Shown piece by piece: positions 719 to 55,550 of a stretch of DNA of 64,000 nucleotides. The DNA lies in NCBI GenBank assembly GCA_026770705.1, contig JANJGN010000071.1, positions 682,001-746,000 of the forward strand. Direction: 5' to 3'. The position numbers were made by a program, and so were the translations under genes. This DNA is from Isurus oxyrinchus (taxonomy: Eukaryota). The stretch's first letter is position 1, and each line of letters opens with the position of its first letter. Below the pieces are notes generated by a model. The model was not told where the DNA came from. It ran no database searches and saw nothing but the letters and a program-made list of their open reading frames with translations.

Positions 719-815
719 TTTCTCACACAGATGAAGATGAAGATTCCAGCCAGGAAAACACTCAACATGATCCCAGCCGTGAACAATCCTACTGTCCATT
801 TACTGGAGTCTCTAC
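719..815 (-). CDS. Gene A transmembrane exon (GRDSSKWTVGLFTAGIMLSVFLAGIFIFICVRK)
   Basis: Acceptor ttttacag| at 816-817 and donor |gtaagt at 718. Encodes about 23 hydrophobic residues with no charged residue, followed by RK. Missed by the ORF track. Confidence 0.85.
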
Positions 816-3800
816 CTGTAAAAACAGCCATTAATTACTGCACTACAGGTTTACAATGATGCTCCGATGTATCTCGAGAAGCGATACACTCACTCAGTGT
901 TTAAATACTCATTCTCGGGCAATGCTGACATTTATTGTCCATCCCTAGTTTCCCCTTGAGAAGGTGGTGGGGGGTCTTCCTCCTGAACCACTGGTTTGTC
1001 CCAAACTGGGAGAGCAGTTCAGAGGGCAGGTAAGAGTTAACCATGATGGTGTCTGAGACTGGAGTCACATATACACCCAGACCTGTTAAAATGGACAGGT
1101 TTCCCTCCCTTAAGATAATTAGTGACCCATATTATATATGTAATTTCTATATATATGTATCAACTAACCTCCCTAAAATAATCAATTATCACCTCAATTT
1201 CATGCTGTTGTTTGTGGGATCTTGCTGTGCACAAATCAGCTGTTGCGTTTCCTACATGATGACAGTGAGCTCACTTTGAAACTGCTTCACTGGTTATCGA
1301 GAGTTTTGGGAATTCCTAAGTATTTTATCAACGCAAGTCTTATTTTTCGATTTAATCCATGTAACATTTATATATAATATTTATCAATGTGATCCCTATA
1401 GCATAAATTTATAATATTTATCAATATAATCTATGTAACATTTATATATAATTTTTATCCATTTAATCTCTGTAATATTTATATATAATGTTTCTCGATT
1501 TAATCCATGTAACATTTATATATAATATTGCCCAATGTAATATATGTAACATTTATATATATTTATCCATTTAAACTGTGAAACATTTATATATAATTTT
1601 TATCAATGTAATCTATGTAACATTTATATATAATATTTCTCGATGTAATCTATGTAATATTTATATATAATATTTAGTCGTTTGGGAGGAGAACCTGAGT
1701 ATTGCTGAGAAAGGACATTTTGTCAAAGCTTTCTGTCTTGCACCCAATGAAGCAGCTTATCTGGGGGAGAGGGTTCCAGATTTCCACTCCCCTTTGTGTG
1801 AAGAAGTGCTTCCTGACATCACCCCCTGAACGGCCTGGCTCCAATTTGACCAAGTGTTGCCATTGTCACATGAGATCAGGTGATTCAAAGCTTGGTCAAA
1901 GGGGTAAGTTCTAAAGAGCATTTTAGAGGAGGTAGAGAGAGAGGTGGAGAGGTTGAGGGAGGGAATTCTCGAGTTTAGGGATCAATCCAGCTGAGTGGAG
2001 ATCGATCCTGAGCGAGTCTCTCACCTTTGACGCACAGATACACCTTGAACATGGCTTCCCCGTGTGGGTTTTGAACCGAGCAGGATGCAATCACTCCCCC
2101 CTCATCCTGGGGTCTCATCAGGGTGAGGGAACCAGTCACCAGATGCCCATCTCTGACCTGCCACGACACAAAACCTCCGTGTGTTTGGTTACCACTGATG
2201 TTGGCACTGGGCAGGTGCCAGGTGAGGTCTCCGGGTGGGTTGGAGGTGGCCACACAGATGCAGGTGACCACCTCTGATCTCCGAGTGCACTCCGACTGCT
2301 GGGAAATCTCCGGCTTATCTGAGGAGGGAAGGACAACAATAAGACAACGTCATAGCAAAGTTAGAGCGTAAGATAGAATCTTAACACTGAAACACTCATT
2401 CCTGCCTTTGTTACCTCTGCACTCAACTATCCCAACACTCTCCTGCCCGACCTCCCATCTTCCACTCTCCGTAAACATCAGCTCATCCCAAACGCTGCTG
2501 TCCCCATGTCCTAACTCACACCGAGTCCCGTTCACATATCACTCCCTGTTGGTCACTGAGGTACACTGGCTCCCGGTCCGACAATGCCACAATTTTAAAA
2601 TTCACATCGTCTCAAATCCCTCCTTACCCCCTCCCTATCTCTGATACCTCCTTCAGACCCTTCAACCCTCCCTATCTCTGTAACCTCCTCCAGCTCCTTC
2701 AACCCTCCCTATCTCTGTAACCTCCTCCAGCCCCTACAACCCTCCCTATCTCAGTAACCTCCTCCAGCCCCTTCAACCCTCCCTATCTCTGTAAACTCCT
2801 CCAGAACCTTCAACCCTCCCTATCTCTGTAACCTCCTCCAGCCCCTTCAACCCTCCCTATCTCTGTAACCTCATCCAGCCCTTACAACCCTCCCTATCTC
2901 TGTAACCTCCTCCAGCCCCTACAACCTTCCTTATCTCTGTAACCTCATCCAGCCCCTACAACCGTCCCTATCTCTGTAACCTCCTCCAGCCCCTTCAACC
3001 TTCCTTATCTCTGTAAACTCCTCCAGCCTCTACAACCCTCCGAGATCTCTGTGCACCTCCAATTCCAGCTTCTTGACATTCCCCCGATTCCTATCGCTCC
3101 ACCATTGGCAGCCGTGCCTTCAGCTGCCTGGATCCTAACCTCTGGAATTCCCTCCCTCATTTCTCACCTCCTTCGGACAAAATCTGACCACCACCAAAAG
3201 CATCTTCCCTTCACCCCCACCCCGTTGGCATTCCACAGGGATCATTCCCTCCAGGACACCCTGGTCCACTCCTCCATCACCCCTAGCACCTCAACCCTCT
3301 CCGATGACATCTTCCCATGTATTTCCAGAAGGTGCAACACCTGCCCCTTTACTTCCTCCCCCCTCACTGTCCAATGACCCAAACACTCCTACCAGGTGAA
3401 GCAGCGCTTCATGCAGACTTCCTTCAATTTAATCTACTGCATTCGCTGCTCCCAATGTGGTCTCCTCTACATTGGAGACACCAAACACAGACTGGGCGAT
3501 CGCTCTGATGAACACCTTCGGTCTGTCCACAAGCATGACCCAGACCTCCCTGTCGCTTGCCATTTTAACACCCCACCCTGCTCTCATGCCCACATGTCCG
3601 TCCTTGGCCTGCTGCATTGTTCCAGTGAAGCCCAACACAAACTGGAGGAACAACACCTCATCTTCCGACCTGGCACTTTACAGCCTTCCCGACTGAATAT
3701 TGAGTTCAACAATTTCAGATCATGAACTCTCTCCTCGATCTTCACTGCTTTTTGAACCCTTTTTTTATGTATTCATTTTAATTGTTTTATTTGTTAACTG

Positions 3801-6800
3801 TTTTCCACTTATTTTTATTATTATTATTTGAAATTCATTTCCATTTTTATTGATTGTTTTATCCGCAGATTTTAGTCTATTTTCGATCTTTATTCCCTCC
3901 ACCGTCCCCTCCCCCTGCCACACCCTCACGAAGGCCATCTGTCTCTTTCCAGAGTGCTTACCCTGGTCCCCCATTATCACACTCTGCTTAATGTCACCAT
4001 TAGCACCTCCTTTATCCAATACCACCACTGTTAACAACCCTTTGACCTTTTGTTTATGACATTTTTCACAATCTCTCCATTGCCTCCACCTATCGCTGGT
4101 TTTCTATCCAGCTCCACCTGTCCCATCGCCCCCCCTTAGACAGGATATATTTCACCACATGTCTACTTCCCTTTAGCTCTGAAGAGGAGTCTTACGGACT
4201 CCAAACGCTAACCCTGTCTTTCTCTCCACAGATGCTGCCAGATGCTCAGAATCAGCTGGATGGACAGAAAGACCAATGAGTGGCTTAGATCAAGAGGAGA
4301 CGTTCAGCAATTAAAAGGGTTGTTCAGGACAGTTAGAGAGAGAAAGGTCGTCAAGTATGGAGATTGGAAACGAAGACCTGACAGCCTTGTCCTCACAACC
4401 ATTGAAGGAGAAACTGAGAGCAAAAACAGAAAGGGAGAGGAAAAATTGGATGTGTGGATAACGTGGACTGAGCGAGGATTGAAGAAAACTGGATTAAAAA
4501 CAACACGATCCCAATGGCTCCACGGAGACCACGGAGACAACAAACAAACAAATGTATCTCCACACTCACGTTCCACAGTGATGGTTATGAACCCCTCCAC
4601 TGCTCCATGTTCATTCTCTGCCACACACTGATAGTCACAACCTGGGCTCCCTCTGCCCTATCAGGTTGGGATAAACAATCCCAAGGGTCAATACAAGGAA
4701 GAGCTCTCCCTGCTCAATATCACTCATTAAAAAAGGACCAGTTTTGTCTTCAACCCAGTGAAGTTTGTGGGATCTTGCTCTGCACAATGTATCCTATTAC
4801 AGCTAGTATAGAATGAAGGGTGTTCATATTTACATTGCACAGTTAGTACGAGGGTCCGCTCCGATGAAACAGATGGATATCTCACTCTGCAGCTGAGAGT
4901 GTGTCCGTGGTGTTTGAGTGATGGGATCAGGGTCAGAACAGAAGTATAGGTCAGAGTGACACCATGCTGAGTTACAGTGTTTGAGACTGATCCAGGTACG
5001 TCAGTGGGAGTGTCCCAGGTTAAGACAGGTGCTGCTGTTCCATTGCACGTTGTGTTGAAGGTGCAGCTTACATCCACACGCTTTCCTGCAATAATTTCAG
5101 CAGGGAATATCGTGGGTTTATCTGTGAAATCTAACAGACAGAGAATGGATCCTTTTAGAGAAATATAACGTGAAGCATCAGTTCAAATAGAAACCACAGT
5201 CCCACAAGAGAAAGCACTTTTACAAGGATGATATCAGAACTGAGAGATTACAATGATCAGGAGAGAATTTCCTATTTTCAGACTTAGTGGAATTTCTGTC
5301 TCTCAGATGAATTCACTTCCACTTTGAGACAATTGAATTGACAATCCCAGGTGAGGGTGGGGGAGCAGCTCACAGTTCCTGACACACTGGCTTGTTACTT
5401 TCTCCGAAATCTGCCAGATTTAAATTCTATCCAGTTCCCAGCAGGAGAGAATCCATTTGAACCAATCACTGAACCGGCATTTAAAGCAGATGATCAGGTT
5501 ATTGATCACATTGCTGTTTCTGGGAGATTCCTGTGAATAAATTGGCTACTGTGTTTCCCAAATTACAACAAGGGCTACATTTCAAGAATTATTTCATTGG
5601 TTGTGAATCCATTTGCGACCTACAGAGGTGGTGAAAGGTGCTAAAGAAATGTGAATCATTCTTTTGTCGATATGTAAGACTGTCAAACAGGGTTAGGGAG
5701 ATCAGTGGGAGTGGATATCCCGAAAACATTGATGGACACAGTCAATACATTTAATCATTGATATTAAAGTGAGTATTAGAGGTTGCTTTAGGACTGAACT
5801 GGAAGCTATCACCAGGTTATTGAGAATCAGACAGTGTGTTATAATAAGCTGTGTTTTGTGTTAATATGTAAACGTCACAGTTTGTGTTATTTCCCATTGA
5901 GTGTTGAATGTGAATTGTTGAGTAATTATAACACAGCACTTACCAGAAACGTGAAGCTGGGTTACAGGGTAATAGTTATGGCCCGGACCATTGTCAAATT
6001 CTATTCTGAAAAAATAAGGTCCTGCATCTTCCCGTCTGATGCTGTTTATAATCAGGGAACAGTCGCCATCTTTCAGGTCTCCAGACAGCCGGGTCCGATG
6101 GCGGAACCGTGGTAACTCGTGACTGTGATCCTTGGAGTGAAAGGCTATGGGAGCCCAGGGAATCTGTTCCTCATTATTAAACCAGACTCCACCTCGCGGT
6201 TGGTTTTCCAGACACGATGGATAACTGTAATGACATGGAATCTGTACACACGAACCTTCCTGAGCTGTCAACTCTCGTGGAGTGTCACCTTTCCACTCTT
6301 GTGACAGTCCAACTGGGGAGAGAAATCTCAATATTTATCTCTGAATGGTTTGTGGATCCACTGAACCCGATATTTACAGATGAGGCTGAATTTGGAGGAT
6401 GGTCAATACTGAGGAGAATGGCAACAAATTATTTTGGCAGGAAGAATAGAAAAACAGAATATTATTTAACTGGAGACAGGCTGCAGAATGCAGTACAGAG
6501 GGATTTGGGTGTCCTTGTACATGAATCACAGAAAGTCAGCATTCAGGAAAACTATGGAATGAGGAAGGCAAGTGGAATGTTGGCCTTTATTGCAAAAGGA
6601 TGGAGTATAAAAGGAGGGAAGTCTTGCAACAACTGCACAGGGTGTTAGTGAGATTGTAACAGGATCATTGTGTACAGGCAGTTCAGAGAAGCTTCACTGG
6701 GCTGATTCCTGGGATTAAAGGGTTTGTCCTGTGAGGAAATGTTGAGCAGGTTGGGCCTGTATCCATTGGAGTTTAGAAGAATGAGGGGTGAGCTTATTGA

Positions 6801-9800
6801 AACATATCCGATTCCGAGGGGGCTTGACAGGGTGGATGCTGGGAGGATGTTTCCCCCTCGTGGGGGAATCTAGAACCAGGGAGCACAGTTTCGGAATGAG
6901 GGCTCCCCCATTTAAGACTGAGATGAGGAGGAATTTCCTCTCTCAGAGGGGCGCTAGCCTGTGGAATTCTCTTCCCCAGAGAGCAGTGGAGGCTGGGCCA
7001 TTGAATAGACTCAAGGCTGAGTGAGGCAGGTTTTTGATTGACAAGGGAGTCAAGGGTTTGGGGGACAGGCAGGAAAATGGAGTTAAGGCCACAACCAGAT
7101 CAGCGAGAGCAGGCTCGAGGGGCCGAATGGCCTGCTCCTGTTCCTATTTCTAATGTTCTTATGTTGTTGTGTTATGAAGAATATTAAAATAGGGATAAAA
7201 GGGATAGCGAGAGAGAGAGAGGGAGAGAGTGAGAGAGAGAGAGTGAGAGAGAGATTGACAGAGAGGGAGAGGTGGGGAGAGGTGTAGAGATAAAATTCCA
7301 GAGCTCGGGGCCCCAGGCAGCAGAAGGCCTGGCTTCCAATGGCACAACGATGGGAATCGGGGGTAGCTCAAGAGACCGGAATTAGAGGAGTGCAGAGATC
7401 TCAGAGGATTGTAGGGGCTGGAGGAGGTTACAGAGATAGGGAGGGGTGTAGGGGCTGGAGGAGGTTACAGAGATAGGGAGGGGTGTAGGGGCTGGAGGAG
7501 GTTACAGAGATAGGGAGGATTGTAGGGGCTGGAGGAGGTTACAGAGATAGGGAGGGTTGTAGGGGCTGGAGGAGGTTACAGAGATAGGGAGGATTGTAGG
7601 GGCTGGAGGAGGTTACAGAGATAGGGAGGGTTGTAGGGGCTGGAGGAGGCTCCTGAGATAGGGAGGGTTGCCATGGCTGAAGCAAGAGGTGAGGATTACT
7701 GTAATGGGGAGGAAAAATATTCAAAAATTGTGACATTGAGACTTTGCTTGACCAGGAGCCAGTCTCGGTCATCGAGCAGAGCGGGTGATAAGGGAACGGG
7801 ACTTGGTGTGAGTAAGGACGTGGTCAGCAGTTTTGGATGGCCTCAAGTTTATGGAGTGTAGAGTGTGTGTTGGAACAGTCGAGTCTGGAGGTAATGAAGG
7901 CGTGGATGAGGGTTTCAGCAGCAGATGAGCTGAGACAGGGTGAAGTCGTGCGATGTTACGGAGGTGGAAATAGACGGTGTTAGTGAGGGCGCAGATATGA
8001 GGCCAGAAGCTCATCTCAGGATCAAATGGGACAACAAAGCTGTGAACAGATTGGCTTCAATCTCAGAGAGCTGCCAGGGAGAGGAATGGAGTTGGTAGCG
8101 AGGGAACAGAGTTTGGAGTGGGGAATGAAGGCAATGGCTTCAGTCTTTCCAATATTTAATTGGAGGGAATTTCTGCCCATCCAGTACTGGATGTCGGATA
8201 AGCAGCCTGATAATTTAGTAGCAGTGGAGGAGTCGAGAGAGGTGGTGGTGAGGTAGAGCTGGGGATCCTCAGTGGACAGGTGAAAACTAATACTGTTCAG
8301 ATGATGCTGCAAAGCCATTGCAAGTGATTCTCTGGCTACGATGAGATGGATAAGAATGGAGCCAGGGGAGAGCAGTCCCACCCAGCTGGACGACAGTGGA
8401 GAGGTGTTGGAGGAGGATGGTGCGGTTGAGCGTGTCAAAGGCTGCAGACAGATCGAGAAGGACGAGGAGGGAAAGTTGACCTTTGTCACAGTCACACAGG
8501 ATGCCATTTGTGACCTTGATAAGAGCTGTTTCAGCACAGTGGCTGGGGTGGGACCCTGATTGGAGGGATTCAAACATGGAGTTCCGGGAAAGATGGGAAA
8601 GGATTTGGGAGATGGAAACACGTTCAAGGACTTTGCAGGGGAAAGAGAGGCTGGAGATGGGACAGGGGTTTACACGGACAGTGTGAGGGGTGGAAGGTGT
8701 AGTGGGGAGGAGACACTTCACTCAGGGGGGAGGTGTCATCACCCCTCAGCTCGGTTTACGTTACAGCTTTGATGTGGATTCAATCACACACAATAAGCTC
8801 ATGGATCTGGGAGCAGAAATAGACAAATCATTAAAAATAGTGACGCTGGTTAACACGGCCAAAAAACAAGCAAATCAAACACTATTATTTCCCATTGAGT
8901 GTTGGATGTGAATTGGTGAGTAATTATAACACAGCACTTACCAGAAACGTGAAGCTGGGTTACAGGATAGTAGCTGTATCTATTTCTGCTGTCAAATTCT
9001 ATTCTGAAATAATAATATCCTGCATCTTCCCGTCTGATGTTGTTTATAATCAGGGAACAGTCACCATCTTTCAGGTCTCCAGACAGCCGGGTCCGATGGT
9101 GGAACCGTGTTAACTTGCGATTGTGATTCTTGGAGTGAAAGGCTATAGACCGTTCATTCCATGTTTCCCAATTCCTTCTCATATACCAGATTCCGACTGG
9201 TGATCTCGCTACTAAATATGATGGATAACTGTAATTACATGGAATCTGTACACACGAACCTTCCTGCGCTGTCACCTCTCGTGGAGTGTTGACTTTCCAC
9301 ACTTGTGATAGTCCAACTACGGAGAGAAATATCAATATTTAACTCTGAATGTTTTCTCAATCCACTATACTCAATATCCACCCCCTCCATCACTGGGGCA
9401 CAGTGGCTGCAGTCTGGATAATCCACAGGTCACACAATGAATGCCCCAAGGTTTTACCACAGATCGAAGAGAATTCTGGACACAGGAGTGGACAAGTTCA
9501 TTCTACATTGGCTCATGGCCCTCAGGAACCTATTTAGTGAAGTCAGTCTGCCACCCAACACAGTGTCTACAAGACGCACTGATTGAAGTGAGTTCACTGC
9601 TGATTTACAATGTAGGACAATGGATTTGGAGCCTTCAGAATTCCCCCATTATCACCATCATGAATCAGTAATTGGCCTAGCTGTCCTAGATCCTCAGTGT
9701 CTAAGGCAGTGGTTCCTATTGTGATGTAAGTATAATAATTTTCATAATATTTTATAGTATATTGTGAAGTAGGTTTATGGGGGTACGCATGATGGGTCTG

Positions 9801-15803: not shown

Positions 15804-15944
15804 CCAGGACCCGTCCGACTGCTCGTCTGGAGAGGAACTGCCCACCCGCTCTGCTTGAGCTGAATGACCTCTTCCTGTGCTGCTCCCTCTGTGTGTTTAA
15901 TTAGAAAGGGTGGATGTGTCACTGTGAGACAAAATGAGGAAGTG
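15804..15944 (-). promoter_or_regulatory. Gene A putative non-coding exon 1 and proximal promoter with PU.1/ETS motif
   Basis: Strong donor CTGG|gtaagt at 15803. AAAATGAGGAAGTG at 15931-15944. Block conserved in all three gene copies. Confidence 0.55.
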
Positions 15945-18491: not shown

Positions 18492-18631
18492 TCAAACAGT
18501 CTGTCGACTTCCTTTCACTGTTTGTTCCTCCCAGACACAGACTCCAGCGATAGTGATAACCACAGCCACAAGGAATATCACAGCTCGTATTCCCAGGATC
18601 AGGATCACGTGCAGAATCTCTCCTCCACTGT
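18492..18631 (-). CDS. Gene B terminal TM exon with intramembrane Arg and short tail (DSGGEILHVILILGIRAVIFLVAVVITIAGVCVWEEQTVKGSRQTV*)
   Basis: ctctag| acceptor, phase 1. CGA (Arg) at 18587-18585. TGA at 18494-18492. Confidence 0.85.
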
Positions 18632-20790: not shown

Positions 20791-21087
20791 CTTGCACAGT
20801 TAGTACGAGGGTCCGCTCCGATGAAACAGATGGATATCTCACTCTGCAGCTGAGAGTGTGTCCGTGGTGTTTGAGTGATGGGATCAGGGTCAGAACAGAA
20901 GTATAGGTCAGAGTGACACCATGCTGAGTTACAGTGTTTGAGACTGATCCAGGTACGTCAGTGGGAGTGTCCCAGGTTAAGACAGGTGCTGCTGTTCCAT
21001 TGCACGTTGTGTTGAAGGTGCAGCTTACATCCACACGCTTTCCTGCAATAATTTCAGCAGGGAATATCATGGGTTTATCTGTGAAAT
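20791..21087 (-). CDS. Gene B Ig C2-set exon
   Basis: 297 bp, phase 1-1, near-identical to 4834-5130. Confidence 0.88.
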
Positions 21088-21815: not shown

Positions 21816-22181
21816 CAGAAATGTGAAGCTGGGTTGCAGGATAGTAGCTGTAACTATTACTGTTGTCAAATTCTATTCTGAAAAAATAAGGTCCTGCATC
21901 TTCCCGTCTGATGTTGTTTATAATCAGGGAACAGTCGCCATCTTTCAGGTCTCCAGACAGCCGGGTCCAATGGTGGAACCGTGGTAACTCGTGACTGTGA
22001 TCCTTGGAGTGAAAGGCTATAGACGATGTTCCCCGTTCCTCATTATTAAACCAGACTCCACCTCGTGGTTGGTTTTCCAGACACGATGGATAACTGTAAT
22101 GACATGGAATCTGTATACAGGAACCTTCCTGCGCTGTCACCTCTCGTGGAGTGTCACCTTTCCACTCTTGTGAGGGTTCAG
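21816..22181 (-). CDS. Gene B V-set exon 2
   Basis: 366 bp open exon with canonical splice sites and YFFRIE. Confidence 0.88.
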
Positions 22182-25192: not shown

Positions 25193-25570
25193 CAGAAACC
25201 TGAAGCTGGGTTACAGGGGAAACGTTATGGCTCGGACGATTGCCAAATTTTATCATGAAAAAATAAGATCCTGCATCTTCCCGTCTGATGTTGTTTATAA
25301 TCAGGGAACAGTCGCCATCTTTCAGGTCTCCAGACAGCCGGGTCCGATGGCGGAACCGTGGCAACTCGCGACTGTGACCCTTGGAGTGAAAGGCTATAGA
25401 CGATTTAGACCATTTGTTCCGTATGTATCTTCTCATTTTCCAGATTCCGACCTGTGTTTTCTTTATCAAATCTGATGGATAACTGTAATGACATGGAATC
25501 TGTACACACGAACCTTCCTGCGCTGTCACCTCTCGTGGAGTGTCACCTTTCCACTCTTGTGACAATCCAA
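25193..25570 (-). CDS. Gene B V-set exon 1 (essential Arg replaced by Met)
   Basis: 378 bp open exon. YFFMIK where paralogs have YFFRIE. Confidence 0.87.
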
Positions 25571-31127: not shown

Positions 31128-31167
31128 CTTGGAGAAGTGACAGGAGGAAGTAAGATTTCCCGATCAC
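31128..31167 (-). pseudogene. Gene B leader exon with GTG in place of ATG (VIGKSYFLLSLLQ)
   Basis: Otherwise identical to the A and C leader coding sequence. Donor |gtaata intact. Confidence 0.8.
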
Positions 31168-34559: not shown

Positions 34560-34676
34560 TTATAAATTCCCATAAACAGAATCCTCGGCAAAATCACAGT
34601 TTGCGTAAAGATCATCATCTGTATCAGGATTGACTCCGCGGTTAGATTTCATTTCCAGATCCTTCTCATCTTTCTT
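34560..34676 (-). CDS. Orphan terminal cytoplasmic exon with tyrosine motifs (KKDEKDLEMKSNRGVNPDTDDDLYANCDFAEDSVYGNL*)
   Basis: Acceptor tttctgtttctattacag|, phase 0, 38 codons then TAA. DLYAN plus C-terminal SVYGNL (ITIM consensus). AATAAA on the minus strand at 33781-33786. Confidence 0.72.
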   Translation of the reverse strand, partial: KKDEKDLEMKSNRGVNPDTDDDLYANCDFAEDSVYGNL

Positions 34677-39298: not shown

Positions 39299-39338
39299 AT
39301 GATCGGGAAATCTTACTTCCTCCTGTCACTTCTCCAAG
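39299..39338 (+). CDS. Gene C leader coding exon MIGKSYFLLSLLQ
   Basis: Acceptor tttcacag| at 39258, ATG at 39299, donor |gtaata at 39339. Confidence 0.84.
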
Positions 39339-45300: not shown

Positions 45301-48300
45301 TTACTTTGGGACTGACTATCTGTCCCGCTCCTTTGCTGCTTCTCCTGGCAACTCCTTTCAACAGAACTGAAAGTATTTTTCTGTTTTTCTCGGTCTCTGT
45401 GGGTCTTTCCGTCTGGACCACTGTTACTAGGCAACAGCACAGTTTCTTCTACCTTGTGTTTGTTTTGACTTCCCTTCAAGAGTCATAAAAACTCATTAGA
45501 TAGGCGGCTTCTTCCAAAGTGAAACCAAAACTCAAGTTCCCCCTTTTCAAAACACCCAAATACAGAAATACAAACTAAACTTCAACTTACAGATATACGT
45601 TATGCCTAACACACACAAATACACAGAGAACTTCCTTAAGCCAAGCCCAGTTCTGAAAAATCACATGACACACTTCCTCTCGAGTGATGTCATGCTGCTG
45701 TCCCTGAAAGGCATATTACAACAGTGTTATCACTTGGCAGGTGATGTGTGCCAGGCAGACCAAGTCCATGAGAGAAAGGTGGTCACACGATCATAATGAT
45801 TTTGCAATTTGTATTTATTATGAGATGTGTGCACTGAATTCAGAAGCAATAATTACACCAAGACCTTTAGAGATTTAAAGAAATAAATTAAAATATTTGT
45901 CATCAAAATAAAAGATTTTAAGCACATACATAAGACTACAATGACTGCTATAATAACTCCTAAAATTCCTAATTAACCTGACTCCCAGTTACACTCCCTT
46001 TAAGGCAACAGACCAAAAATAGATGTTAGATTTAAAACAAACTCAGCAAGTTAACACAATGCCCTGGACAATGGAATTCCAAATGGATTTTCCCCAACTT
46101 CAGTTCTGTTGGATAGCAGGTTGTGCACAAACAGGGTCCTGAGCACCATCAGCCAATGTAGAATGAACTTGTCCACTCCTGTGTCCAGGATTCTCTTCCA
46201 TCCATTGTGATATCTTGTGGAGTTCCTTGTGTGTCCTGTAGATGGTCCAAACTGCAGCCACTGTGCCCCAGTGATGGAGGGGGTGGATATCGAGTCTAGT
46301 GGATCTACAAACCATCCAGAGTTTAATATTGATATTTCTCTCCCCAGTTGGACTGTCACAAGAGTGGAAAGGTGACAGTCCCCGAGAGGTGACAGCGCAG
46401 GAAGGTTCATGTGTACAGATTCCATGTCATTACAGTTACTCATCACATTTGGTAAAGAAAACACATGTCGGAATCTGGTATATGAGGAGGTACATACAGA
46501 ACAAATGGTCTAAATGGTCTATAGCCTTTCACTCCAAGGATCACAGTCACGAGTTACCACGGTTCCACCATCGGACCCGGCTGTCTGGAGACCTGAAAGA
46601 TGGCGACTGTTCCCTGATTATAAACAACATCAGACGGGAAGATGAAGGACCTTATTTTTTCAGAATAGAATTTGACAATGGTCCGAGCCATAACTATTAC
46701 CCTGAAACCCAGCTTCAGGTTTCTGGTAAGTGCTGTGTTATAATTACTCAACAATTCACTCAATGGGAAATAATAGTGTTTGATTTGCTTGTTTTTTGGC
46801 CGTGTTAACCAGCGTCACTATTTTTAATGATTTGTCTATTTCTGCTCCCAGATCCATGAGCTTATTGTGTGTGATTGAATCCACATCATAGCTGTAATAT
46901 AAACCGAGCTGAGGGGTGATGACACATCCCCCCTGAGTGAAGTGTCTCCTCCCCACTACACCTTCCACCCCTCACACTGTCCGTGTAAACCCCCGTCCCA
47001 TCTCCAGCCTCTCTTTCCCCTCCAAAGTCCTGCAACCTGTTTCCATCTCCCGAATCCGTCCCCATCTTTCCCGGAACTCCATGTTTGAATCCCTCCAATC
47101 AGGTTCCCACCCCAGCCACTGTGCTGAAACAGCTCTTATCAAGGTCACAAATGGCATCCTGTGTGACTGTGACAAAGGTCAACTTTCCCTCCTCGTCCTT
47201 CTCGATCTGTCTGCAGCCTTTGACACGCTCGACCACACCATCCTCCTCCAACACCTCTCCACTGTCGTCCAGCTGGGTGGGACTGCTCTCCCCTGGCTCC
47301 ATTCTTATCCATCTCATCGTAGCCAGAGAATCACTTGCAATGGCTTTGCAGCATCATCTGAACAGTGTTAGTTTTCACCTGTCCACTGAGGATGCCCAGC
47401 TCTACCTCGCCACCACCTCTCTCGACTCCTCCACTGCTGCTAAATTATCAGGCTGCTTATCCGACATCCAGTACTGGATGGGCAGAAATTCCCTCCAATT
47501 AAATATTGGAAAGACTGAAGCCATTGTCTTCATTCCCCGCTCCAAACTCTGTTCCCTCGCTACCAACTCCATTCCTCTCCCTGACAGTTCTCTGAGATTG
47601 AAGCCAATCTGTTCACAGCTTTGTTGTCCCATTTGATCCTGAGATGAGCTTCCGGCCTCCTATCTGCGCCCTCACTAACACCGTCTATTTCCACCTCAGT
47701 AACATCGCACGACGTCACCCTGTCTCAGCTCATCTGCTGCTGAAACCCTCATCCACACCTTCATTACCTCCAGACTCGACTGTTCCAACACACGCTCTAC
47801 ACTCCATAAACTTGAGGCCATTCAAAACTGCTGACCACGTCCTTACTCACACCAAGTCCCATTCCCTTATCACCCGCTCTGCTCGATGACCGAGACTGGC
47901 TCCTGGTCAAGCAAAGTCTCAATGTCCAAATTTACATATTTGTTTCCTCTCTATCCCTGTAATCTCCTCGTCCTCCTCCAGTACCTACAACCATCCCATT
48001 CTCTGTAACCTCTTGAAGTATCTACCGCTTCCCTATATCTGCAAATTGATCCTGCCCAACAAACCTACCAATCTCTGCAACCTCCTCCAGCCACTACAAA
48101 TCTCCCTATTTCTGTAACTTCCTCCTGCCCCTAAAAGCTTCCCTATCTCTGTAGCCTGCTCCAGTCCCGACAACTTTCCCTGCCCCTGTAACCTGCCCCA
48201 GTCACTACAACCCTCCCTACCTCTGCAAACTCCTCCAGACCCTACACTCTCCCAATCTCTCTTAACTTTTCCAGCCCCTACAACCCTCCCTATCTCTGTA

Positions 48301-51300
48301 ACTCCTCCAATCACTACAACCCTCCTTATCTCTGTAACCTCCTCCAGCCCCTCCAACCCTCTGAGGTCTCTGTGCTCATCCAATTCCAGCCTCTTGACCA
48401 TCCCCCGATCCCATCACTGCAATATCGGCGGCCGTGCCTTCAGCTGCCTGGGGCCCGAGCTCTGTAATACCCTCCCTCATCCCCTCTCCGTCCCTCTCTC
48501 TCACTCTCTCTGTCTCTCTCTCTCTCTCTCTCTATCTCTATCTCTCTGTCTCTCTCTCACTATCCATTTCATCCCTCTTTGAAGATTCTCCATAACACCG
48601 ACCTCTTCTGGTCAGCTGTCGCTAATATCTCCACATGTGTCTGGGTGACATACTTTGTTTTATGACGCTCCTGTGTAGCACCTTGGGGTGATTTGTCATG
48701 TTAAAGTTGTTGTGTAAATATAAGTTGTTGCCCTTTGACCCGCGACCCCAGCTCGAGTCTTATTTTTGAGGGAATGTACAACCTCCTTAGATTTCTGACC
48801 AAAATGTAATTTGATTATTTTTATTGAGCGAATGCCAAGCCCCGATACCGAGCGAGAGCCTCCTCATTTGCTGAGTTTAAGGTGATGAGTCAGCCCCTTA
48901 GTCCGTAGAGGGGATTCTCCTCGGTAATGTGCAGCCTTGTTTGTGTCTCTCCACAAGCGCATGAGGGATTTGTACAGAGGCTGCAGCGCTGGAGGGGGTC
49001 TGCACAGGGGTCCTGGCCTGTCCTGAGCTGGTTTTAGCAAGGACCACTCTGGCCTTGGCAGCTGAAAGCCAGCCATTGGACAGACAGGGCCTGTCACATG
49101 GAGCCTGTTAGTCACTCCCCCCCGTGTCTCCTGTGCTCGGATCCAGACCATGTTGGCTGGTGGATCTGGCTCAGGAAGGGTCCTCCCCATGGGACCCCCA
49201 GATGGAAGGTGGGTCGAGCGGGTCAGTCACTTGCATGTTTATTCTGCAGCTTTAATATTTTAAGAAGGTAAGAATGTAGGAACATAAGAAATAGGGACAG
49301 GAGCAGGCCATTCGGCCCCTCCAGCCTGCCCTCGCTGATCTGGTTGTGGCCTTAACTCCATTTTCCTGCCTGTCCCCCAAACCCTTGACTCCCTTGTCGA
49401 TCAAAAACCTGCCTCACTCAGCCTTGAGTCTATTCAATGGCCCAGCCTCCACTGCTCTCTGGGGAAGAGAATTCCACAGGCTAGCGCCCCTCTGAGAGAG
49501 GAAATTCCTCCTCATCTCAGTCTTAAATGGGAGAGTCCTCATTCCGAAACTGTGCTCCCTGGTTCTAGATTCCCCCACGAGGGGGAAACATCCTCCCAGC
49601 ATCCACCCTGTCAAGCCCCCTCGGAATTGGATATGTTTCAATAAGGTCACCCCTCATTCTTCTAAACTCCAATGGATACAGGCCCAACCTGCTCAACATT
49701 TCCTCACAGGACAAACCCTTTAATCCCAGGAATCAGCCCAGTGAAGCTTCTCTGAACTGCCTGTACACAATGATCCTGTTACAATCTCACTAACGCCCTG
49801 TGCAGCTGTTGCAAGACTTCCCTCCTTTTATACTCCATCCCTTTGCAATAAAGGCCAACATTCCACTTGCCTTCCTCATTCCGTGGTGTTCCTGAATGCT
49901 GACTTTCTGTGATTCATGTACAAGGACACCCAGATCCCTCTGTACTGCATTCTGCAGCCTGTCTCCATTTAAATAATATCCTGTTTTTCTATTCTTCCTG
50001 CCAAAATAATTTGTTGCCATTCTCCTCAGTATTGACCATCCCCCCAATTCAGCCTCATCTGTAAATTTTGAGTCTAGTGGATCCACAAACCATCCAGAGA
50101 TAAATATTGAGATTTCTCTCCCCAGTTGGACTGTCACAAGAGTGGAAAGGTGACACTCCACGAGAGGTGACAGCTCAGGAAGGTTCGTGTGTACAGATTC
50201 CATGTCATTACAGTTATCCATCGTGTCTGGAAAACCAACCGCGAGGTGGACTCTGGTTTAATAATGAGAAACAGATTCCCTGGGCTCCCATTGCCTTTCA
50301 CTCCAAGGATCACAGTCACGAGTTACCACGGTTCCGCCATCGGACCCGGCTGTCTGGAGACCTGAAAGATGGCGACTGTTCCCTGATTATAAACAACATC
50401 AGACGGGAAGATGCAGGACCTTATTTTTTCAGAATAGAATTTGACAATGGTCCGAGCCATAACTATTACCCTGTAACCCAGCTTCACGTTTCTGGTAAGT
50501 GCTGTGTTATAATTACTCAACAATTCACATTCAACACTCAATGGGAATTAACACAAACTGTGACGTTTACATATTAACACAAAACACAGTTTATTATAAC
50601 ACACTGTCTGATTCTCAATAACCTGGTGATAGCTTCCAGTTCAGTCCTAAAGCAATGTCTAATACTCACTTTAATATCAATGATTAAATGTGTTGACTGT
50701 GTCTATCAATGTTATCAGGTTATCCACTCCCATCAATCTCTCAAATCCTGTCTTGAAGTCTGACATATCGACAGAAGAAAGATTTACATTTCTACAGCGC
50801 CTTTCACCACCCTAGACTTCCCACCCTAAACCTCTCCCTGTCCCTCTTCCTCTCCCTCTCTCTCTCTCTCTCTCTGTCTCTTTCTCTCTGTCTCTCCATA
50901 ACACCGACCTCTTCTGGCCAGCTGTCGCTAATATCTACATGTGTCTGGGTGACATACTTTGTTTTATGACGCTCCTGTGTAGCACCTTGAGGTGATTTGT
51001 CATGTTAAAGTTGTTGTGAAAATATAAGTTGTTGCCCTTTGACTCTCGACCCCAGATCGAGTCTTATTTTTGAGGGAATGTACAACCTCCTTAGATTTCT
51101 GACCAAAATGTCATTTGATTATTTTTATTGAGCGAATGCCAAGCCCCGATACCCGAGCGAGAGCCTCCTCATTTGCCGAGTTTAGGGTGATGAGTCAGCC
51201 CCTTAGTCCGTAGAGGGGATTCTCCTCGGTAATGAGCAGCCTTGTTTGTGTCTCTCCACAAGCGCATGAGGGGTTTGTACAGAGGCTGCAGCGCTGGAGG

Positions 51301-54300
51301 GGGTCTGCACAGGGGTCCTGGCCTGTCCTGAGCCGGTTTTAGCAAGGACAACTCTGGCCTTGGCAGCTGAAAGCCAGCCATTGGACAGACGGGGCCTGTC
51401 ACAAGGAGCCTGTTAGTCACTCCCCCCCGTGTCTCCTGTGCTCGGATCCAGACCATGTTGGCTGGTGGATCTGGCTCAGGAAGGGTCCTCCCCATGGGAC
51501 CCCCAGATGGAAGGTGGGTCGAGCGGTTCAGTCACTTGCATGTTTATTCTGCAGCTTTAATATTTTAAGAAGGTAAGAATGTAGGAACATAAGAAATAGG
51601 GACAGGAGCAGGCCATTCGGCCCCTCCAGCCTGCTCTCACTGATCTGGTTGTGGCCTTAACTCCATTTTCCTGCCTGTCCCCCAAACCCTTGACTCTCTT
51701 GTCGATCAAAAACCTGCCTCACTCAGCCTTGAGTCTATTCAATGGCCCAGCCTCCACTGCTCTCTGGGGAAGAGAATTCCACAGGCTAGCGCCCCTCTGA
51801 GAGAGGAAATTCCTCCTCATCTCAGTCTTAAATGGGAGAGCCCTCATTCTGAAACTGTGCTCCCTGGTTCTAGATTCCCCCACGAGGGGGAAACATCCTC
51901 CCAGCATCCACCCTGTCAAGCCCCCTCGGAATTGGATATGTTTCAATAAGGTCACCCCTCATTCTTCTAAACTCCAATGGATACAGGCCCAACCTGCTCA
52001 ACATTTCCTCACAGGACAAACCCTTTAATCCCAGGAATCAGCCCAGTGAAGCTTCTCTGAACTGCCTGTACACAATGATCCTGTTACAATCTCACTAACG
52101 CCCTGTGCAGCTGTTGCAAGACTTCCCTCCTTTTATACTCCATCCCTTTGCAATAAAGGCCAACATTCCACTTGCCTTCCTCATTCCGTGGTGTTCCTGA
52201 TTGCTGACTTTCTGTGATTCATGTACAAGGACAACCAGATCCCTCTGTACTGCATTCTGCAGCCTGTCTCCATTTAAATAATATCCTGTTTTTCTATTCT
52301 TCCTGCCAAAATAATTTGTTGCCATTCTCCTCAGTATTGACCATCCCCCCAATTCAGCCTCATCTGTAAATTTTGAGTCTAGTGGATCCACAAACCATCC
52401 AGAGTTAAATATTGAGATTTCTCTCCCCAGCTGAACCCTCACAAGAGTGGAAAGGTGACACTCCACGAGAGGTGACAGTGCAGGAAGGTTCCTGTGTACA
52501 GATTCCATGTCATTATAGTTATCCATCATGTCTGGAAAACCAACCGCGACGTGGAGTCTGGCTTAATAATGAGGAATGGAGAACATCGTCTATAGCCTTT
52601 CACTCCAAGGATCACAGTCACGAGTTACCACGGTTCCACCATCGGACCCGGCTGTCTGGAGACCTGAAAGATGGCGACTGTTCCCTGATTATAAACAACA
52701 TCACATGGGAAGATGCAGGACCTTATTTTTTCAGAATAGAATTTGACAATGGTCCGAGCCATAACTATTACCCTGTAACCCAGCTTCACGTTTCTGGTAA
52801 GTGCTGTGTTATAATTACTCAACAATTCACATTCAACACTCAATGGGAAATAACACAAACTGTGACGTTTACATATTAACACAAAACACAGCTTATTATA
52901 ACACACTGTCTGATTCTCAATAACCTGGTGATAGCTTCCAGTTCAGTCCTAAAGCAACCTCTAATACTCACTTTAATATCAATGATTAAATGTATTGACT
53001 GTGTCCATCAATGTTATCAGGTTATCCATTCCCATCAATCTCTCTAATCCTGTCTCGAAGTCTGACATATCGACAGAAGAAAGATTCACATTTCTGTAGC
53101 ACCTTTCACCACCTCAGCATGGACCAAATCACTTCACAGCCAATGAGCTGATTCCTGAATTTAAGTTACTATTGTAATGTGGGAAACACAGCAACCAATT
53201 TGCGCACAGCAAGCTCCCACAAATTGCAAAGTAAAAAATGGCCTAGATCGCTGAGGGACTGATGGGTTAGTGCACTCCAAACTCTGGTCTGCTCCACCAC
53301 CCTCACCCACTATTATCAGTTCAAGTGTCTCGGAGTGAACGTGTATTAAGCTGAGAGACAGAAACACCAAAGTCTCAAAGCAGGAAATTCTCTCCTAATC
53401 ATTGTAACCTCTCAGATCTGATATCATCCTTGTAAAAGTGCTTTTTCTTGTGGGACTGTGATTTCTACTTGAACTGATGCTTCACGTTATATTTCTCTAA
53501 AAGGATCCATTCTCTGTCTGTTAGATTTCACAGATAAACCCATGATATTCCCTGCTGAAATTATTGCAGGAAAGCGTGTGGATGTAAGCTGCACCTTCAA
53601 CACAACGTGCAATGGAACAGCAGCACCTGTCTTAACCTGGGACACTCCCACTGACGTACCTGGATCAGTCTCAAACACTGTAACTCAGCATGGTGTCACT
53701 CTGACCTATACTTCTGTTCTGACCCTGATCCCATCACTCAAACACCACAGACACAATCTCAGCTGCAGAGTGAGATATCCATCTGTTTCATCGGAGCGGA
53801 CCCTCGTACTAACTATGCAAGGTAAGTACGGACACCCTTCATTCTACATCAGCACTCCCTCAGCGCTGACCCTCTGACAGTGCAGCCCGTTCTCAGTGTC
53901 CACATTCTCATGCCTCTCAAAGTGCTTCACAGTCGATAGAAGTTAACTGATCTTTATTTGATTGTTGCTGAATGAAGAGACAAGCTGTCTAAACTTTGCA
54001 TCTCACACACATTATTTTCCATGGCAACACCTCCTCCAATCAGAGACCACTTGCTGATTAACCAGCACTCTCTTCCCTTTAAATATAAATTGTTGTTCAC
54101 TTTCTGTTGGTAAACCTGCAATCTGTCTTGTTGAGTCCAGTCCTGACATCTGAATATCACAATGAACAGAACAAGTTCCAACAATGAGCTGTGGTTGGTG
54201 ATTCCTCACGTTACATCCAGGGACACTGGAGACTATCAGTGTGCTCAGAGAATGAACATGGAGCAGTGGAGGGGTTCATAACCATCACTGTGGAACGTTA

Positions 54301-55550
54301 GTTAAGACAAACTTCAACATCTCTCTCAGATTGAAACACTACAAAAACACACATAAATATACAGCCTTAAATAGACACCTGCATACACACAATCCCACAT
54401 CTATGAGCACACACAAAGACACACTCACAAACAAACACACTAGCACATACTCCCCTGTGGATTACCTGACCTCCCTCAGTGCTGCACCGGAGAGTTGACC
54501 TGGATTCTGGGATTTGTGTTCCCTTTCATATTTATGGAAGAATATGGAAATTGCAAAGTCTATTACAGACACTCAGATGCACAGAGATACTCACAGATAC
54601 ACTCTGCCTCTCCAACTCTCTATCCTACTTTAAGAACCTTCCTGAAATCTAACTCTTTGACCAGTCACCAGTCCCAATTCCTCCTTACGTGATTTTGTGT
54701 GAAATTTTGTTTGAGTATCTGAGAGTAAGAGGGAAGTGGAGAGGTTTAGGAAGGGAATTCCTGTTGCTGAAAAGCTTACATCAAGTTCTCAGCTTTCCAG
54801 TGCCCATTTTTCACATGATGTCCATGTTCATAATGGGGATTGCCTATGTAAACATCACGCTGTAGTTACACTCTCCCACCAGTGGTAGCACGGTAACACT
54901 TAACCCTTGCATCTCCAAGCTTTTCAAGCAATTTCACTTCCTAATTTCCTACTATTCACCTCAACCATTCCCTGTGGGAGCGAGTTCCATATTCTCCCCT
55001 CTCTCTGGGTAAAGATTGGAACTGTTTATTAAGCGGGGGGTGTAAGTCCGTGGGGGAGTCCATCCCGATACTGCCCGATTCGCACACACGGCTGAGATGG
55101 ATTTTCACCCGGCACTAAAGGTTTCCAGAATTTTCTACAGCACAATCCTGTACACAGCGATGGAGAGAAACATTGGACAGGGAGTCCAACAGCACAATGA
55201 TCCATTCTCACCAATGTTCCACGCTAAGGAGAAAGTTCCGATTGTCCACTCTTAGAGTGTTTACAATGAAAACATTCATTCCACATTGAATCCCAGTGGA
55301 TGGGTCAATATTACAGCAAATGTTGCAGTGATATGAAGCTTGATTGTTCAGCCAGAGTGAGAGATTGAAAGCGGAGAGTCAGTGATGATTTCTTTCTGTG
55401 TGTTCTCTAGACAGTGGAGGAGAGATTCTGCACGTGATCCTGATCCTGGGAATACGAGCTGTGATATTCCTTGTGGCTGTGGTTATCACTATCACTGGAG
55501 TCTGTGTCTGGGAGAGACAAACAGTGAAAGGAAGTCGACAGACTGTTTGA
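39299..55550 (+). CDS. Gene C: intact Siglec-like activating-type receptor, leader-V1-V2-V3-C2-TM(Arg)-short tail
   Basis: Exons 39299-39338, 46348-46725, 50126-50494, 52431-52796, 53525-53821 and 55411-55550. All open and phase-compatible with canonical splice sites, running ATG to TGA. Confidence 0.88.
40380..44240 (-). mobile_element. Degraded Gypsy (longer paralogous copy: gag, protease AKIDT.AS, integrase remnants) with nested SINE (~40870-41190) and MITE-like insert (~42517-42640)
   Basis: Inverted homolog of 12140-14280 with extra pol segments. SINE B-box GGTTCAAATCC at ~40940. Confidence 0.78.
46348..46725 (+). CDS. Gene C V-set exon 1
   Basis: 378 bp open exon with YFFRIE. Confidence 0.9.
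46985..48480 (+). mobile_element. L2 RT fragment plus 37 bp minisatellite (paralogous copy)
   Basis: LLVLLDLSAAFDTLDH. Confidence 0.85.
49275..50065 (-). mobile_element. CR1 fragment (paralogous copy)
   Basis: Homologous to 22232-23030. Confidence 0.85.
50126..50494 (+). CDS. Gene C V-set exon 2
   Basis: 369 bp open exon, 5 aa different from gene A V2. Confidence 0.9.
51580..52370 (-). mobile_element. CR1 fragment (second copy from the 2.3 kb tandem duplication)
   Basis: Homologous to 49275-50065. Confidence 0.85.
52431..52796 (+). CDS. Gene C V-set exon 3
   Basis: 366 bp open exon starting AEPSQ like gene B V2, with YFFRIE. Confidence 0.9.
53525..53821 (+). CDS. Gene C Ig C2-set exon
   Basis: 297 bp, tgttag| and |gtaagt. 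Confidence 0.9.
55411..55550 (+). CDS. Gene C terminal TM exon with intramembrane Arg (DSGGEILHVILILGIRAVIFLVAVVITITGVCVWERQTVKGSRQTV*)
   Basis: ctctag| acceptor. CGA at 55455-55457. TGA at 55548-55550. Confidence 0.86.

What the first reader, a model, noticed from the sequence alone, without database searches (positions are those of the whole stretch)
719..55550. Paired activating/inhibitory Siglec-like receptor cluster, apparently in a cartilaginous fish
Seen: three paralogs share near-identical ectodomain exons but have two unrelated 3' ends. A has an extra MAG-Ig5-like domain, an uncharged TM and further cytoplasmic exons. B and C have a single terminal exon with Arg inside the TM and a ~12 aa tyrosine-free tail. 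Established: this is the layout of paired receptors such as human SIGLEC5/SIGLEC14 and SIGLEC11/SIGLEC16, where a charged-TM member signals through an ITAM adaptor. Inference: an independently evolved paired Siglec-like system. The inhibitory role of A is not proven because its tail is off-window.
Basis: partly seen in the sequence, partly recalled or inferred. Interest (0 to 1): 0.88.

Follow-up and report, generated by a model that had tools for sequence, protein, structure and literature searches.

The report
Shark paired activating/inhibitory Siglec gene cluster
This shark DNA holds three duplicated Siglec-type immune receptor genes: one has an inhibitory-type end, and two end in a conserved exon with an arginine in the membrane span, which matters because paired Siglecs like this have so far been described only in mammals.

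Summary
The window is a 3-fold segmental duplication (two direct copies, one inverted) from a lamniform shark. It carries three CD33/MAG-like Siglec genes.

- **Shared parts:** each gene has a leader exon, 2-3 intact Siglec-type V exons (7 in all) and one C2 exon that is 96-99% identical between genes.
- **Gene A:** it continues with a MAG-Ig5-like domain and an uncharged TM exon. Its tail lies off the window.
- **Genes B and C:** they end in one terminal exon that encodes an Arg-containing TM and a 12-residue tail without tyrosine.

RNA contigs from three runs (two studies) show the GT..AG splice from the C2 exon to the Arg-TM exon.

The Arg-TM exon is conserved, with an invariant ILGIRA core, in three shark orders. 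The C2 domains group by shark order, not by tail type (AU test p = 0.003). That pattern is the concerted evolution expected of paired receptors.

Caveats:
- Gene B has lost its ATG, and its V1 has lost the sialic-acid arginine.
- V1 exons are only 71-84% identical between genes.
- A's ITIM is inferred from Carcharodon homologs.
- Adaptor binding is untested.

The family is auto-annotated in RefSeq for many sharks and rays, but I found no paper on it. The scan flagged the same kind of pair elsewhere in this genome (s1-868598, s1-868674, s1-866815). I call it a new variant of a known kind. Interest is 0.62.

The parts
15314..15353 (-). Gene A leader exon (coding part, MIGKSYFLLSLLQ + 1 nt, donor AAG|gtaata). 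An out-of-frame ATG lies upstream.
8942..9316 (-). Gene A V-set exon V1 (intact, YYFR arginine present)
5944..6312 (-). Gene A V-set exon V2 (intact, 95.9% aa identical to C_V2)
4834..5130 (-). Gene A C2-1 exon (donor T|gtaaat, so the junction codon with the next exon is Tyr)
4563..4657 (-). Gene A relic of the C2-2 exon (3' half only, the 5' half is deleted)
2025..2318 (-). Gene A membrane-proximal C2 exon, MAG-Ig5-like
719..815 (-). Gene A uncharged TM exon (phase-2 donor AAA|gtaagt). The cytoplasmic exons are off the window.
31128..31167 (-). Gene B leader exon, with the start codon changed from ATG to GTG
25193..25570 (-). Gene B V1 exon (open frame, canonical Arg replaced: YFFM)
21816..22181 (-). 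Gene B V2 exon (AEPSQEW-type, the last V before C2)
20791..21087 (-). Gene B C2-1 exon (donor G|gtaagt)
20308..20650 (-). Gene B decayed C2-2 exon (frameshift, the 'SNLTW' strand is deleted)
18492..18631 (-). Gene B terminal exon (coding part): Arg-containing TM, 12-residue tail without Tyr, stop
39299..39338 (+). Gene C leader exon (ATG intact)
46348..46725 (+). Gene C V1 exon
50126..50494 (+). Gene C V2 exon. RNA contigs join the leader to its acceptor and join its donor to C2-1.
52431..52796 (+). Gene C V3 exon. RNA contigs enter it from a V exon that ends ...LHVS.
53525..53821 (+). Gene C C2-1 exon
54034..54296 (+). Gene C decayed C2-2 exon (two frameshifts in the window sequence)
55411..55550 (+). 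Gene C terminal exon (coding part): Arg-containing TM, 12-residue tail, stop. Spliced to C2-1 in RNA contigs.
34563..34676 (-). Orphan but intact ITIM-type terminal exon (…DLYANC…SVYGNL, stop) in the spacer between the B and C leaders
15804..15890 (-). Relic of a juxtamembrane cytoplasmic exon (P0004-like) upstream of leader A. Copies lie at 31603-31782 (-) and 38756-38863 (+).

Best explanation
The window holds a tandem/inverted cluster of three CD33/MAG-like Siglec genes of a lamniform shark. The cluster arose by segmental duplication and is organised as paired receptors.

- **Gene A:** leader, V1, V2, C2-1, MAG-Ig5-like C2, uncharged TM, then a tail off the window. It is the inhibitory-type member.
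- **Genes C and B:** leader, V1, V2 (plus V3 in C), C2-1, then one terminal exon. They are activating-type members. The terminal exon puts an arginine about a third of the way into the membrane span and leaves only a 12-residue tail without tyrosine.

Shown:
- The exon anatomy.
- The Siglec-type V fold markers.
- The C2-1 to Arg-TM splice in RNA contigs.
- Deep conservation of the Arg-TM exon.
- Lineage-wise homogenisation of the ectodomain across tail types.

Inferred:
- The Arg pairs with the TM aspartate of an ITAM adaptor (DAP12 or FcR-gamma type), so that ligand binding activates the cell.
- A recruits SHP phosphatases through an ITIM/ITSM tail and inhibits the cell.
- The V domains bind sialic acid.

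Gene B is probably decaying, because it has lost its start codon and its V1 has lost the canonical Arg.
For: - **Duplication map:**
- **V-set and Ig_CD22 Pfam hits above cut-off for all 7 V exons:**
- **PDB hits:** best matches are Siglec-5, -7, MAG, -8 and CD33, with YFFR and C-x4-C aligned.
- **Splice sites and phases:** intact.
- **Leaders:**
- **Arg-TM exon:**
- **RNA joints:** GT..AG joint 53821->55411 in X1, X2 and X6. Joints leader->V2, V->V3 and V2->C2-1 are also seen. X1 3'UTR contigs have 0 mismatches.
- **RefSeq models with the same tail:** P0006, P0166, P0170, P0178, P0181, P0194.
- **Model with A's architecture:** P0155, with a tail ELLYANPQVF…AEYAQIRF.
- **A's TM end:** 100% identical to P0155, P0168 and P0177.
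- **Invariant ILGIRA core:** in 11 sequences from 3 shark orders.
- **C2-1 tree:** it groups by order. Monophyly of Arg-TM members is rejected (p-AU 0.003), with at least 7 tail changes on the tree.
Against: - A's cytoplasmic tail is not in the window. In some Carcharodon homologs the proximal motif is LLYANP, which is not a canonical ITIM.
- Gene B has GTG in place of ATG, and its V1 reads YFFM.
- The RNA contigs are short, were laid at 92% likeness or more, and paralogs are 93-97% alike. The joints therefore prove the splice for the family and probably for C, but not uniquely for C.
- No adaptor gene, binding or signalling was tested.
- V1 exons are only 71-84% identical between the genes.
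Confidence: 0.75

Rival explanations
1. B and C encode tail-less decoy or co-receptor forms that do not signal through an ITAM adaptor. The TM arginine would serve another role, such as membrane positioning, retention or oligomerisation.
For: - No adaptor was examined.
- The tail is short and has no motif.
- The atlas search of the exon gave no informative relatives.
Against: The invariant G-I-R-A core sits inside a hydrophobic span and is kept across three shark orders. In known immune receptors this is the pattern of adaptor-dependent TM segments (established knowledge: Siglec-14/-15/-16, KIR-DS, PILR-beta).
Confidence: 0.12
2. The copies in this window are dying duplicates. The transcripts seen come from intact paralogs elsewhere in the genome, so this particular locus is not a working pair.
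For: - B has no ATG, and its V1 has lost the Arg.
- The C2-2 exon is decayed in all three genes.
- Many paralogs exist.
- Contigs were laid at 92% likeness or more.
Against: - Every coding exon of C and all in-window exons of A keep open frames and consensus splice sites.
- C has an intact ATG.
- X1 contigs match C's 3'UTR with 0 mismatches at high depth, next to the C2-1->Arg-TM joint.
Confidence: 0.1
3. The proteins are Siglec-like in fold but recognise a ligand other than sialic acid. In that case 'Siglec' describes ancestry, not function.
For: - dN/dS between V paralogs is high (0.4-1.4), with variation concentrated in the C-C' loop.
- One V domain has lost the Arg.
Against: Six of seven V domains keep the canonical Arg and the Siglec cysteine pattern, aligned with Siglec-5.
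Confidence: 0.15
4. The triplication is an assembly artefact, either uncollapsed haplotypes or a mis-join.
For: It is a repeat-rich region with satellites at the copy borders.
Against: - The copies differ by 3-10% and in structure: C has an extra V exon, B has a 567-bp insertion, and A has a different 3' end.
- Carcharodon RefSeq lists several such genes on single contigs.
Confidence: 0.03

Closest known systems
Human SIGLEC5/SIGLEC14 and SIGLEC11/SIGLEC16 paired receptors
   Same: - Linked genes with highly similar ligand-binding domains.
- One partner has an uncharged TM and a long tail.
- The other has a basic TM residue and a short tail without tyrosine.
- Ectodomains are homogenised between partners (review PMC13358205; PMC4042635).
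   Different: - The shark activating exon is old, being shared by three shark orders, whereas the mammalian pairs are recent.
- The shark genes carry 2-3 tandem V-set exons.
- Adaptor use is unknown.
- One of the two activating copies here lacks a start codon.
Mammalian CD33-related Siglecs (CD33, Siglec-5, -7, -8, -10)
   Same: - Best PDB matches of the V and C2-1 exons.
- Homologs of gene A end in a proximal (L)LYA(N/S)xxF motif and a distal TEYAQI motif. From my memory, this resembles the CD33 ITIM plus ITIM-like pair.
   Different: - More than one V domain.
- A MAG-Ig5-like membrane-proximal domain.
- Orthology and synteny with the mammalian cluster were not tested.
- PMC7226832 states that fish genomes lack CD33-related Siglecs.
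Myelin-associated glycoprotein (MAG, Siglec-4)
   Same: The V, C2-1 and membrane-proximal domains match MAG Ig1, Ig2 and Ig5.
   Different: - A multigene, fast-evolving family.
- ITIM/ITSM-type or Arg-TM ends.
- RNA found in runs of unknown tissue.
- Not a single conserved gene.
RefSeq predicted proteins of sharks and rays (for example Carcharodon XP_041037179, Scyliorhinus canicula XP_038670873, S. torazame XP_072325011)
   Same: Same family and same exon joins, 90-100% identity per exon to Carcharodon models.
   Different: - These are automatic models with borrowed mammalian names.
- No exact match to this window.
- I found no publication that describes them as paired receptors.

Membership tests
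Siglec (I-type lectin) family | N-terminal V-set Ig domain of the Siglec type | tested here: met
   All 7 V exons score above the Pfam cut-offs for V-set and Ig_CD22. The best PDB matches are Siglec-5, -7, MAG, -8 and CD33, E 5e-15 to 3e-13.
Siglec (I-type lectin) family | Conserved sialic-acid-binding arginine on strand F | tested here: met
   YFFR aligns with the YFFRVE of Siglec-5. It is present in 6 of 7 V exons. B_V1 has Met instead.
Siglec (I-type lectin) family | Three-cysteine pattern of the V domain (C-x4-C in strand B plus Cys in strand E) | tested here: met
   GSCVQIPC and GDCSL align with LCVLVPC and KNCSL of Siglec-5. The pattern is invariant in all 7 V exons.
Siglec (I-type lectin) family | Binds sialylated glycans | not testable with these tools
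   This needs glycan arrays or cell binding with Arg mutants.
CD33-related Siglec subgroup | Cytoplasmic ITIM plus a distal ITIM-like/ITSM motif | not testable with these tools
   Gene A's tail is off the window. The closest homologs with an identical TM end carry LLYAN(P/I)… and (T/A)EYAQI.
CD33-related Siglec subgroup | One V-set domain followed by C2-set domains | tested here: not met
   Each gene has 2-3 intact V exons. V-to-V joins are seen in RNA contig ends and in RefSeq models P0155, P0170 and P0007.
CD33-related Siglec subgroup | Orthology or synteny with the mammalian CD33rSiglec cluster | not tested
   No tetrapod reference set or flanking genes were available. The nearest non-shark hits are amphibian CD33-like models.
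Paired activating/inhibitory immune receptors | Closely linked genes with highly similar ligand-binding domains | tested here: met
   All three genes lie within 55 kb. C2-1 is 96-99% identical and A_V2 against C_V2 is 95.9% in protein. V1 exons are only 71-84% identical.
Paired activating/inhibitory immune receptors | Activating partner: basic residue inside the TM and a short tail without a signalling motif | tested here: met
   …ILILGIRAVIF… followed by a 12-residue tail without Tyr. The exon is spliced to C2-1 in RNA.
Paired activating/inhibitory immune receptors | Inhibitory partner: uncharged TM and an ITIM-bearing tail | tested here: inconclusive
   The uncharged TM exon is present. The tail is off the window and is inferred from homologs.
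Paired activating/inhibitory immune receptors | Ectodomains kept alike by gene conversion or concerted evolution | tested here: met
   The C2-1 tree groups by shark order. The AU test rejects one clade of Arg-TM members (p 0.003), with at least 7 tail-type changes.
Paired activating/inhibitory immune receptors | Activating partner associates with an ITAM adaptor (DAP12 / FcR-gamma) | not testable with these tools
   No shark adaptor sequence was available. The literature searches gave nothing.

The most novel reading that the evidence does not exclude
Galeomorph sharks keep an ancient Siglec paired-receptor system. One conserved 'activating cassette' exon (Arg-TM, short tail) has been re-paired again and again, by duplication and gene conversion, with fast-evolving ectodomains that string two or three sialic-acid-type V domains in tandem. 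No Siglec with that architecture has been described. Together with inhibitory partners that carry a CD33-like ITIM+ITSM tail, this would place CD33/MAG-type immune Siglecs and their activating counterparts before or near the base of jawed vertebrates. That runs against the published statement that fish lack CD33-related Siglecs.
Probability: 0.45. Interest if true: 0.78.

Novelty: new variant of a known kind. Interest (0 to 1): 0.62.

Why it matters
Paired Siglecs are the textbook example of host receptors evolving under pathogen sialic-acid mimicry, and they have been described only in mammals. Reviews say that fish lack CD33-related Siglecs (PMC7226832), and a 2025 survey of vertebrate sialoglycan-binding proteins does not mention sharks (PMC13358205).

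A shark system would give an independent, much older instance of this arms race. It has a conserved Arg-TM exon, homogenised ectodomains and tandem V domains.

It also makes several questions directly testable:
- Which adaptor the Arg-TM receptor uses.
- Which glycans the V domains bind.
- Whether the tandem V domains each bind sialic acid.

Tried and rejected
- **Leader scan:** an ab initio leader-exon scan gave a false candidate (MSSISIG…, inside a retroelement). It was replaced by the homology-defined leader.
- **Atlas search:** the search of the Arg-TM exon gave scores of 0.84 or less and unnamed clusters, so nothing usable.
- **Literature searches:** searches for shark Siglecs, shark DAP12 and TYROBP found nothing relevant. 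PMC3015071 is not held.
- **A's tail:** tblastn of homolog tails against 1-760 found no cytoplasmic exon of gene A.
- **Joined models:** the spliced models were not assembled or sent to any search or fold tool.
- **Not run:**
  - Complex prediction was not used because no shark adaptor sequence was available.
  - No structure was predicted.
- **Species:** the species could not be named. Runs are coded. The best protein identities are 95-100% per exon to Carcharodon and 92-97% to Cetorhinus, with no exact full match.
Full report
**What is in the window.** The 64-kb window has no N runs. Self-comparison shows a three-fold segmental duplication. Copy A spans about 4.8-15.9 kb and copy B about 20.8-31.8 kb, both with genes on the minus strand. 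Copy C spans about 38.7-53.8 kb and is inverted, with its gene on the plus strand. DNA identity between copies is 90-97%. Copy C also carries an internal 2.2-kb tandem duplication (48587-50811 against 50893-53113, 96.9%) that adds a third V exon. Retroelement fragments and 33-, 37- and 43-bp satellites fill introns and spacers.

**Exons.**
- **V exons.** Seven V-set exons are present: A 8942-9316 and 5944-6312, B 25193-25570 and 21816-22181, C 46348-46725, 50126-50494 and 52431-52796. Each is an open, phase 1-1 exon with a (c/t)ag acceptor and a G|gtaagt donor.
- **Leader exons.** Homology to shark RefSeq proteins located them at 15314-15353, 31128-31167 and 39299-39338 (MIGKSYFLLSLLQ, phase 1). 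A and C start with ATG. B has GTG and no other in-frame ATG in that exon.
- **C2-1 exons.** Each gene has one: 4834-5130, 20791-21087 and 53525-53821. They are 96-99% identical in protein.
- **C2-2 exons.** A further exon type (C2-2, '…NEHGAVEG…') is decayed in all three genes. It is truncated in A, frameshifted with loss of the 'SNLTW' strand in B and C, and has a second frameshift in C.

**The two 3' ends.** Downstream of C2-1, A shares only a 74-nt C2-2 relic with B and C.
- **Gene A.** It continues with a membrane-proximal C2 exon (2025-2318) whose only strong PDB match is MAG Ig5 (E 5e-11). An uncharged TM exon follows (719-815, donor AAA|gtaagt). No cytoplasmic exon lies in 1-718.
- **Genes B and C.** They end in one exon (18492-18631 and 55411-55550). 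After the junction Asp it reads SGGEILHV-ILILGIRAVIFLVAVVITI(A/T)GVCVW, then 12 residues without Tyr, then a stop.

The junction codons fit both models. A's C2-1 ends in T, giving Tyr with the next exon, as in Carcharodon P0155. The C2-1 of B and C ends in G, giving Asp, as in P0170.

**Siglec identity.** All V exons pass the Pfam V-set and Ig_CD22 cut-offs. The best solved relatives are Siglec-5, Siglec-7, MAG, Siglec-8, CD33, Siglec-10 and sialoadhesin. CD22 and Siglec-15 are far weaker. The YFFR arginine and the C-x4-C plus E-strand cysteine pattern align with Siglec-5. Six of the seven V domains keep the Arg. B_V1 has Met. C2-1 matches MAG Ig2 and the CD33 C2 domain.

**Expression and splicing.** Laying contigs of four runs on 50050-55999 gave these joints:
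- A GT..AG joint from 53821 to 55411 (C2-1 to Arg-TM exon) in X1 and X2 (one sample) and in X6 (another study, organism B).
- A joint 54296->55411 (C2-2 to Arg-TM) in X4, on a 674-nt contig about 93% like the window, so from a paralog or a relative with an intact C2-2.
- A joint 50494->53525 (V2 to C2-1).
- Contig ends that join the leader to 50126 (32 nt).
- Contig ends that join a V exon ending …LHVS to 52431 (11 nt; three contigs in X1, one in X2).

X1 also holds contigs identical to C's 3'UTR (55537-55725 and 55816-55999, 0 mismatches). The GT..AG joints show that these runs contain spliced RNA. Paralogs are 93-97% alike and the contig sides are short.

**Relatives.** A full HMMER search with the C2-1 exon found 24 proteins at E<1e-30. 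All those I named come from elasmobranchs: Carcharodon, Cetorhinus, Mustelus, Scyliorhinus, Stegostoma, Chiloscyllium, Pristis, Pristiophorus and skates. Their automatic names are 'CD33-like', 'Siglec-5/8/10/12/13/14' and 'MAG-like'.
- Per-exon identity to Carcharodon models is 95-100% and to Cetorhinus 92-97%, with no full exact match. The source is therefore a lamniform shark that I cannot name.
- P0155 (Carcharodon, 598 aa) has exactly gene A's architecture. Its tail holds ELLYANPQVF and AEYAQIRF. Other Carcharodon models with the same TM end have ELLY(A/T)NINF and TEYAQIRF, a canonical ITIM and ITSM.
- The last 14 residues of A's TM exon are identical to those models.
- P0166, P0170 and P0181 (Carcharodon), P0178 and P0194 (S. 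canicula), P0006 and P0225 (S. torazame) and P0016 and P0013 (Chiloscyllium) carry the Arg-TM exon. The core ILGIRA-x-IF is invariant in all 11 sequences.
- The nearest non-shark hits are amphibian CD33-like models.

**Paired-receptor dynamics.** A maximum-likelihood tree of the C2-1 domain (42 rows) groups sequences by shark order. Lamniformes have support 97/82 and Orectolobiformes 100/99. Arg-TM, ITIM/ITSM and YxN-type tails are mixed inside each group. Forcing all Arg-TM members into one clade costs 49.6 log-likelihood units (p-AU 0.003), and at least seven tail-type changes are needed on the tree. I named the group after seeing the tree, which weakens the p-value somewhat. The Arg-TM exon itself is plainly homologous across orders. 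It follows that ectodomains are repeatedly exchanged or homogenised between activating and inhibitory genes. Within the window, A_V2 and C_V2 differ by 5 replacements and 1 silent change (95.9% aa). V1 exons are 71-84% alike, with differences concentrated in the C-C' region and dN/dS of 0.4-1.4.

**Mechanism.**
- Shown: the anatomy, the splice and the conservation.
- Inferred from established knowledge of Siglec-14/-15/-16, PILR-beta and KIR-DS: the TM Arg pairs with the TM Asp of an ITAM adaptor, so C (and B, if it is translated) would activate.
- Inferred: A would inhibit through SHP recruitment by an ITIM/ITSM tail.
- Inferred: the V domains would bind sialic acid.
- B is probably decaying. 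It has GTG in place of ATG, YFFM in V1 and HHW in V2.

**Literature.** I found no paper on shark Siglec pairs. PMC7226832 states that fish genomes lack CD33-related Siglecs. The 2025 review PMC13358205 treats paired Siglecs only in mammals and never mentions sharks. The whale-shark genome paper lists Siglecs only as one gene family that arose in jawed vertebrates.

**Earlier scan notes.** First-reader notes flag the same kind of pair on other pieces of this genome and several sub-features of this window. I treated them as leads. I checked the Arg-TM exon, the A_V2/C_V2 near-copy and the orphan ITIM exon myself.

**Limits.**
- The joined spliced models were not searched or folded. Exons were handled one by one by reference.
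- Adaptor binding, ligand binding, tissue of expression and gene A's tail remain open.

Noticed in passing
31128-31167 (-), 25193-25570 (-), 21816-22181 (-): Gene B shows signs of decay. Its leader start codon is GTG with no in-frame ATG in the exon. Its V1 has YFFM in place of YFFR. Its V2 has HHWTRL in place of HHRTRL. All frames are still open.
   Followed up: partly
34563-34676 (-): An intact orphan terminal exon with DLYANC and a canonical SVYGNL ITIM plus a stop lies in the unique spacer between the head-to-head leaders of B and C. It is not colinear with any gene in the window.
   Followed up: partly
15804-15890 (-), 31603-31782 (-), 38756-38863 (+): A relic of a juxtamembrane cytoplasmic exon (like Carcharodon P0004, …GSSTGRGHSAQAERVGSSSP…) sits 0.4-0.6 kb upstream of each leader. 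The duplicated unit therefore began inside the 3' end of an older inhibitory neighbour.
   Followed up: partly
15354-15375 (-): Gene A's leader exon has an upstream ATG in another frame (MKYLGVDNDREILLPPVTSP). RefSeq isoforms P0002 and P0168 of Carcharodon start with exactly this peptide, so those models probably translate the wrong frame. In Scyliorhinus, MKYL is in frame with MIGKSYF.
   Followed up: partly
4730-4833 (-): Gene A's C2-1 donor is weak (T|gtaaat), and the frame stays open for 34 codons into the intron. A Cetorhinus RefSeq isoform (P0162) ends with the orthologous read-through peptide, so a secreted V-V-C2 form is possible.
   Followed up: no
5944-6312, 21816-22181, 50126-50494, 52431-52796: All V exons that are not first in their gene carry an extra cysteine (YPSCLEN). 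The three V1 exons have Y, D or H there. Together with the V-to-V splices, this fits a tandem-V ectodomain with extra interdomain disulfides.
   Followed up: no
54243: RNA contigs of all four runs carry an extra T after 54243, which would remove gene C's second frameshift in the decayed C2-2 exon. They probably come from paralogs with an intact C2-2, but an allele or an assembly error is not excluded.
   Followed up: no
16174-17145, 56283-56832, 63342-63574; 31852-33223; 2629-3041, 7404-7670, 47972-48361: A 33-bp satellite lies just downstream of both Arg-TM exons. A 43-bp satellite (32 copies) lies between the B and C leaders. A 37-bp minisatellite lies in introns.
   Followed up: no
10398-10484 (+), 25947-26039 (+), 45856-45972 (-): A hydrophobic TM-like open frame (LGILGVIIAVIVV…) recurs in each copy on the strand opposite to the Siglec gene, near V1. 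It may be chance or part of a repeat.
   Followed up: no
8287-8721 (-), 24669-25097 (-), 46937-47371 (+), 59270-59644 (-), 3396-3725 (+): Reverse-transcriptase fragments lie between V1 and V2 in every copy, so they predate the duplication. A weak GIY-YIG (Penelope-like) hit lies in gene A's intron.
   Followed up: partly
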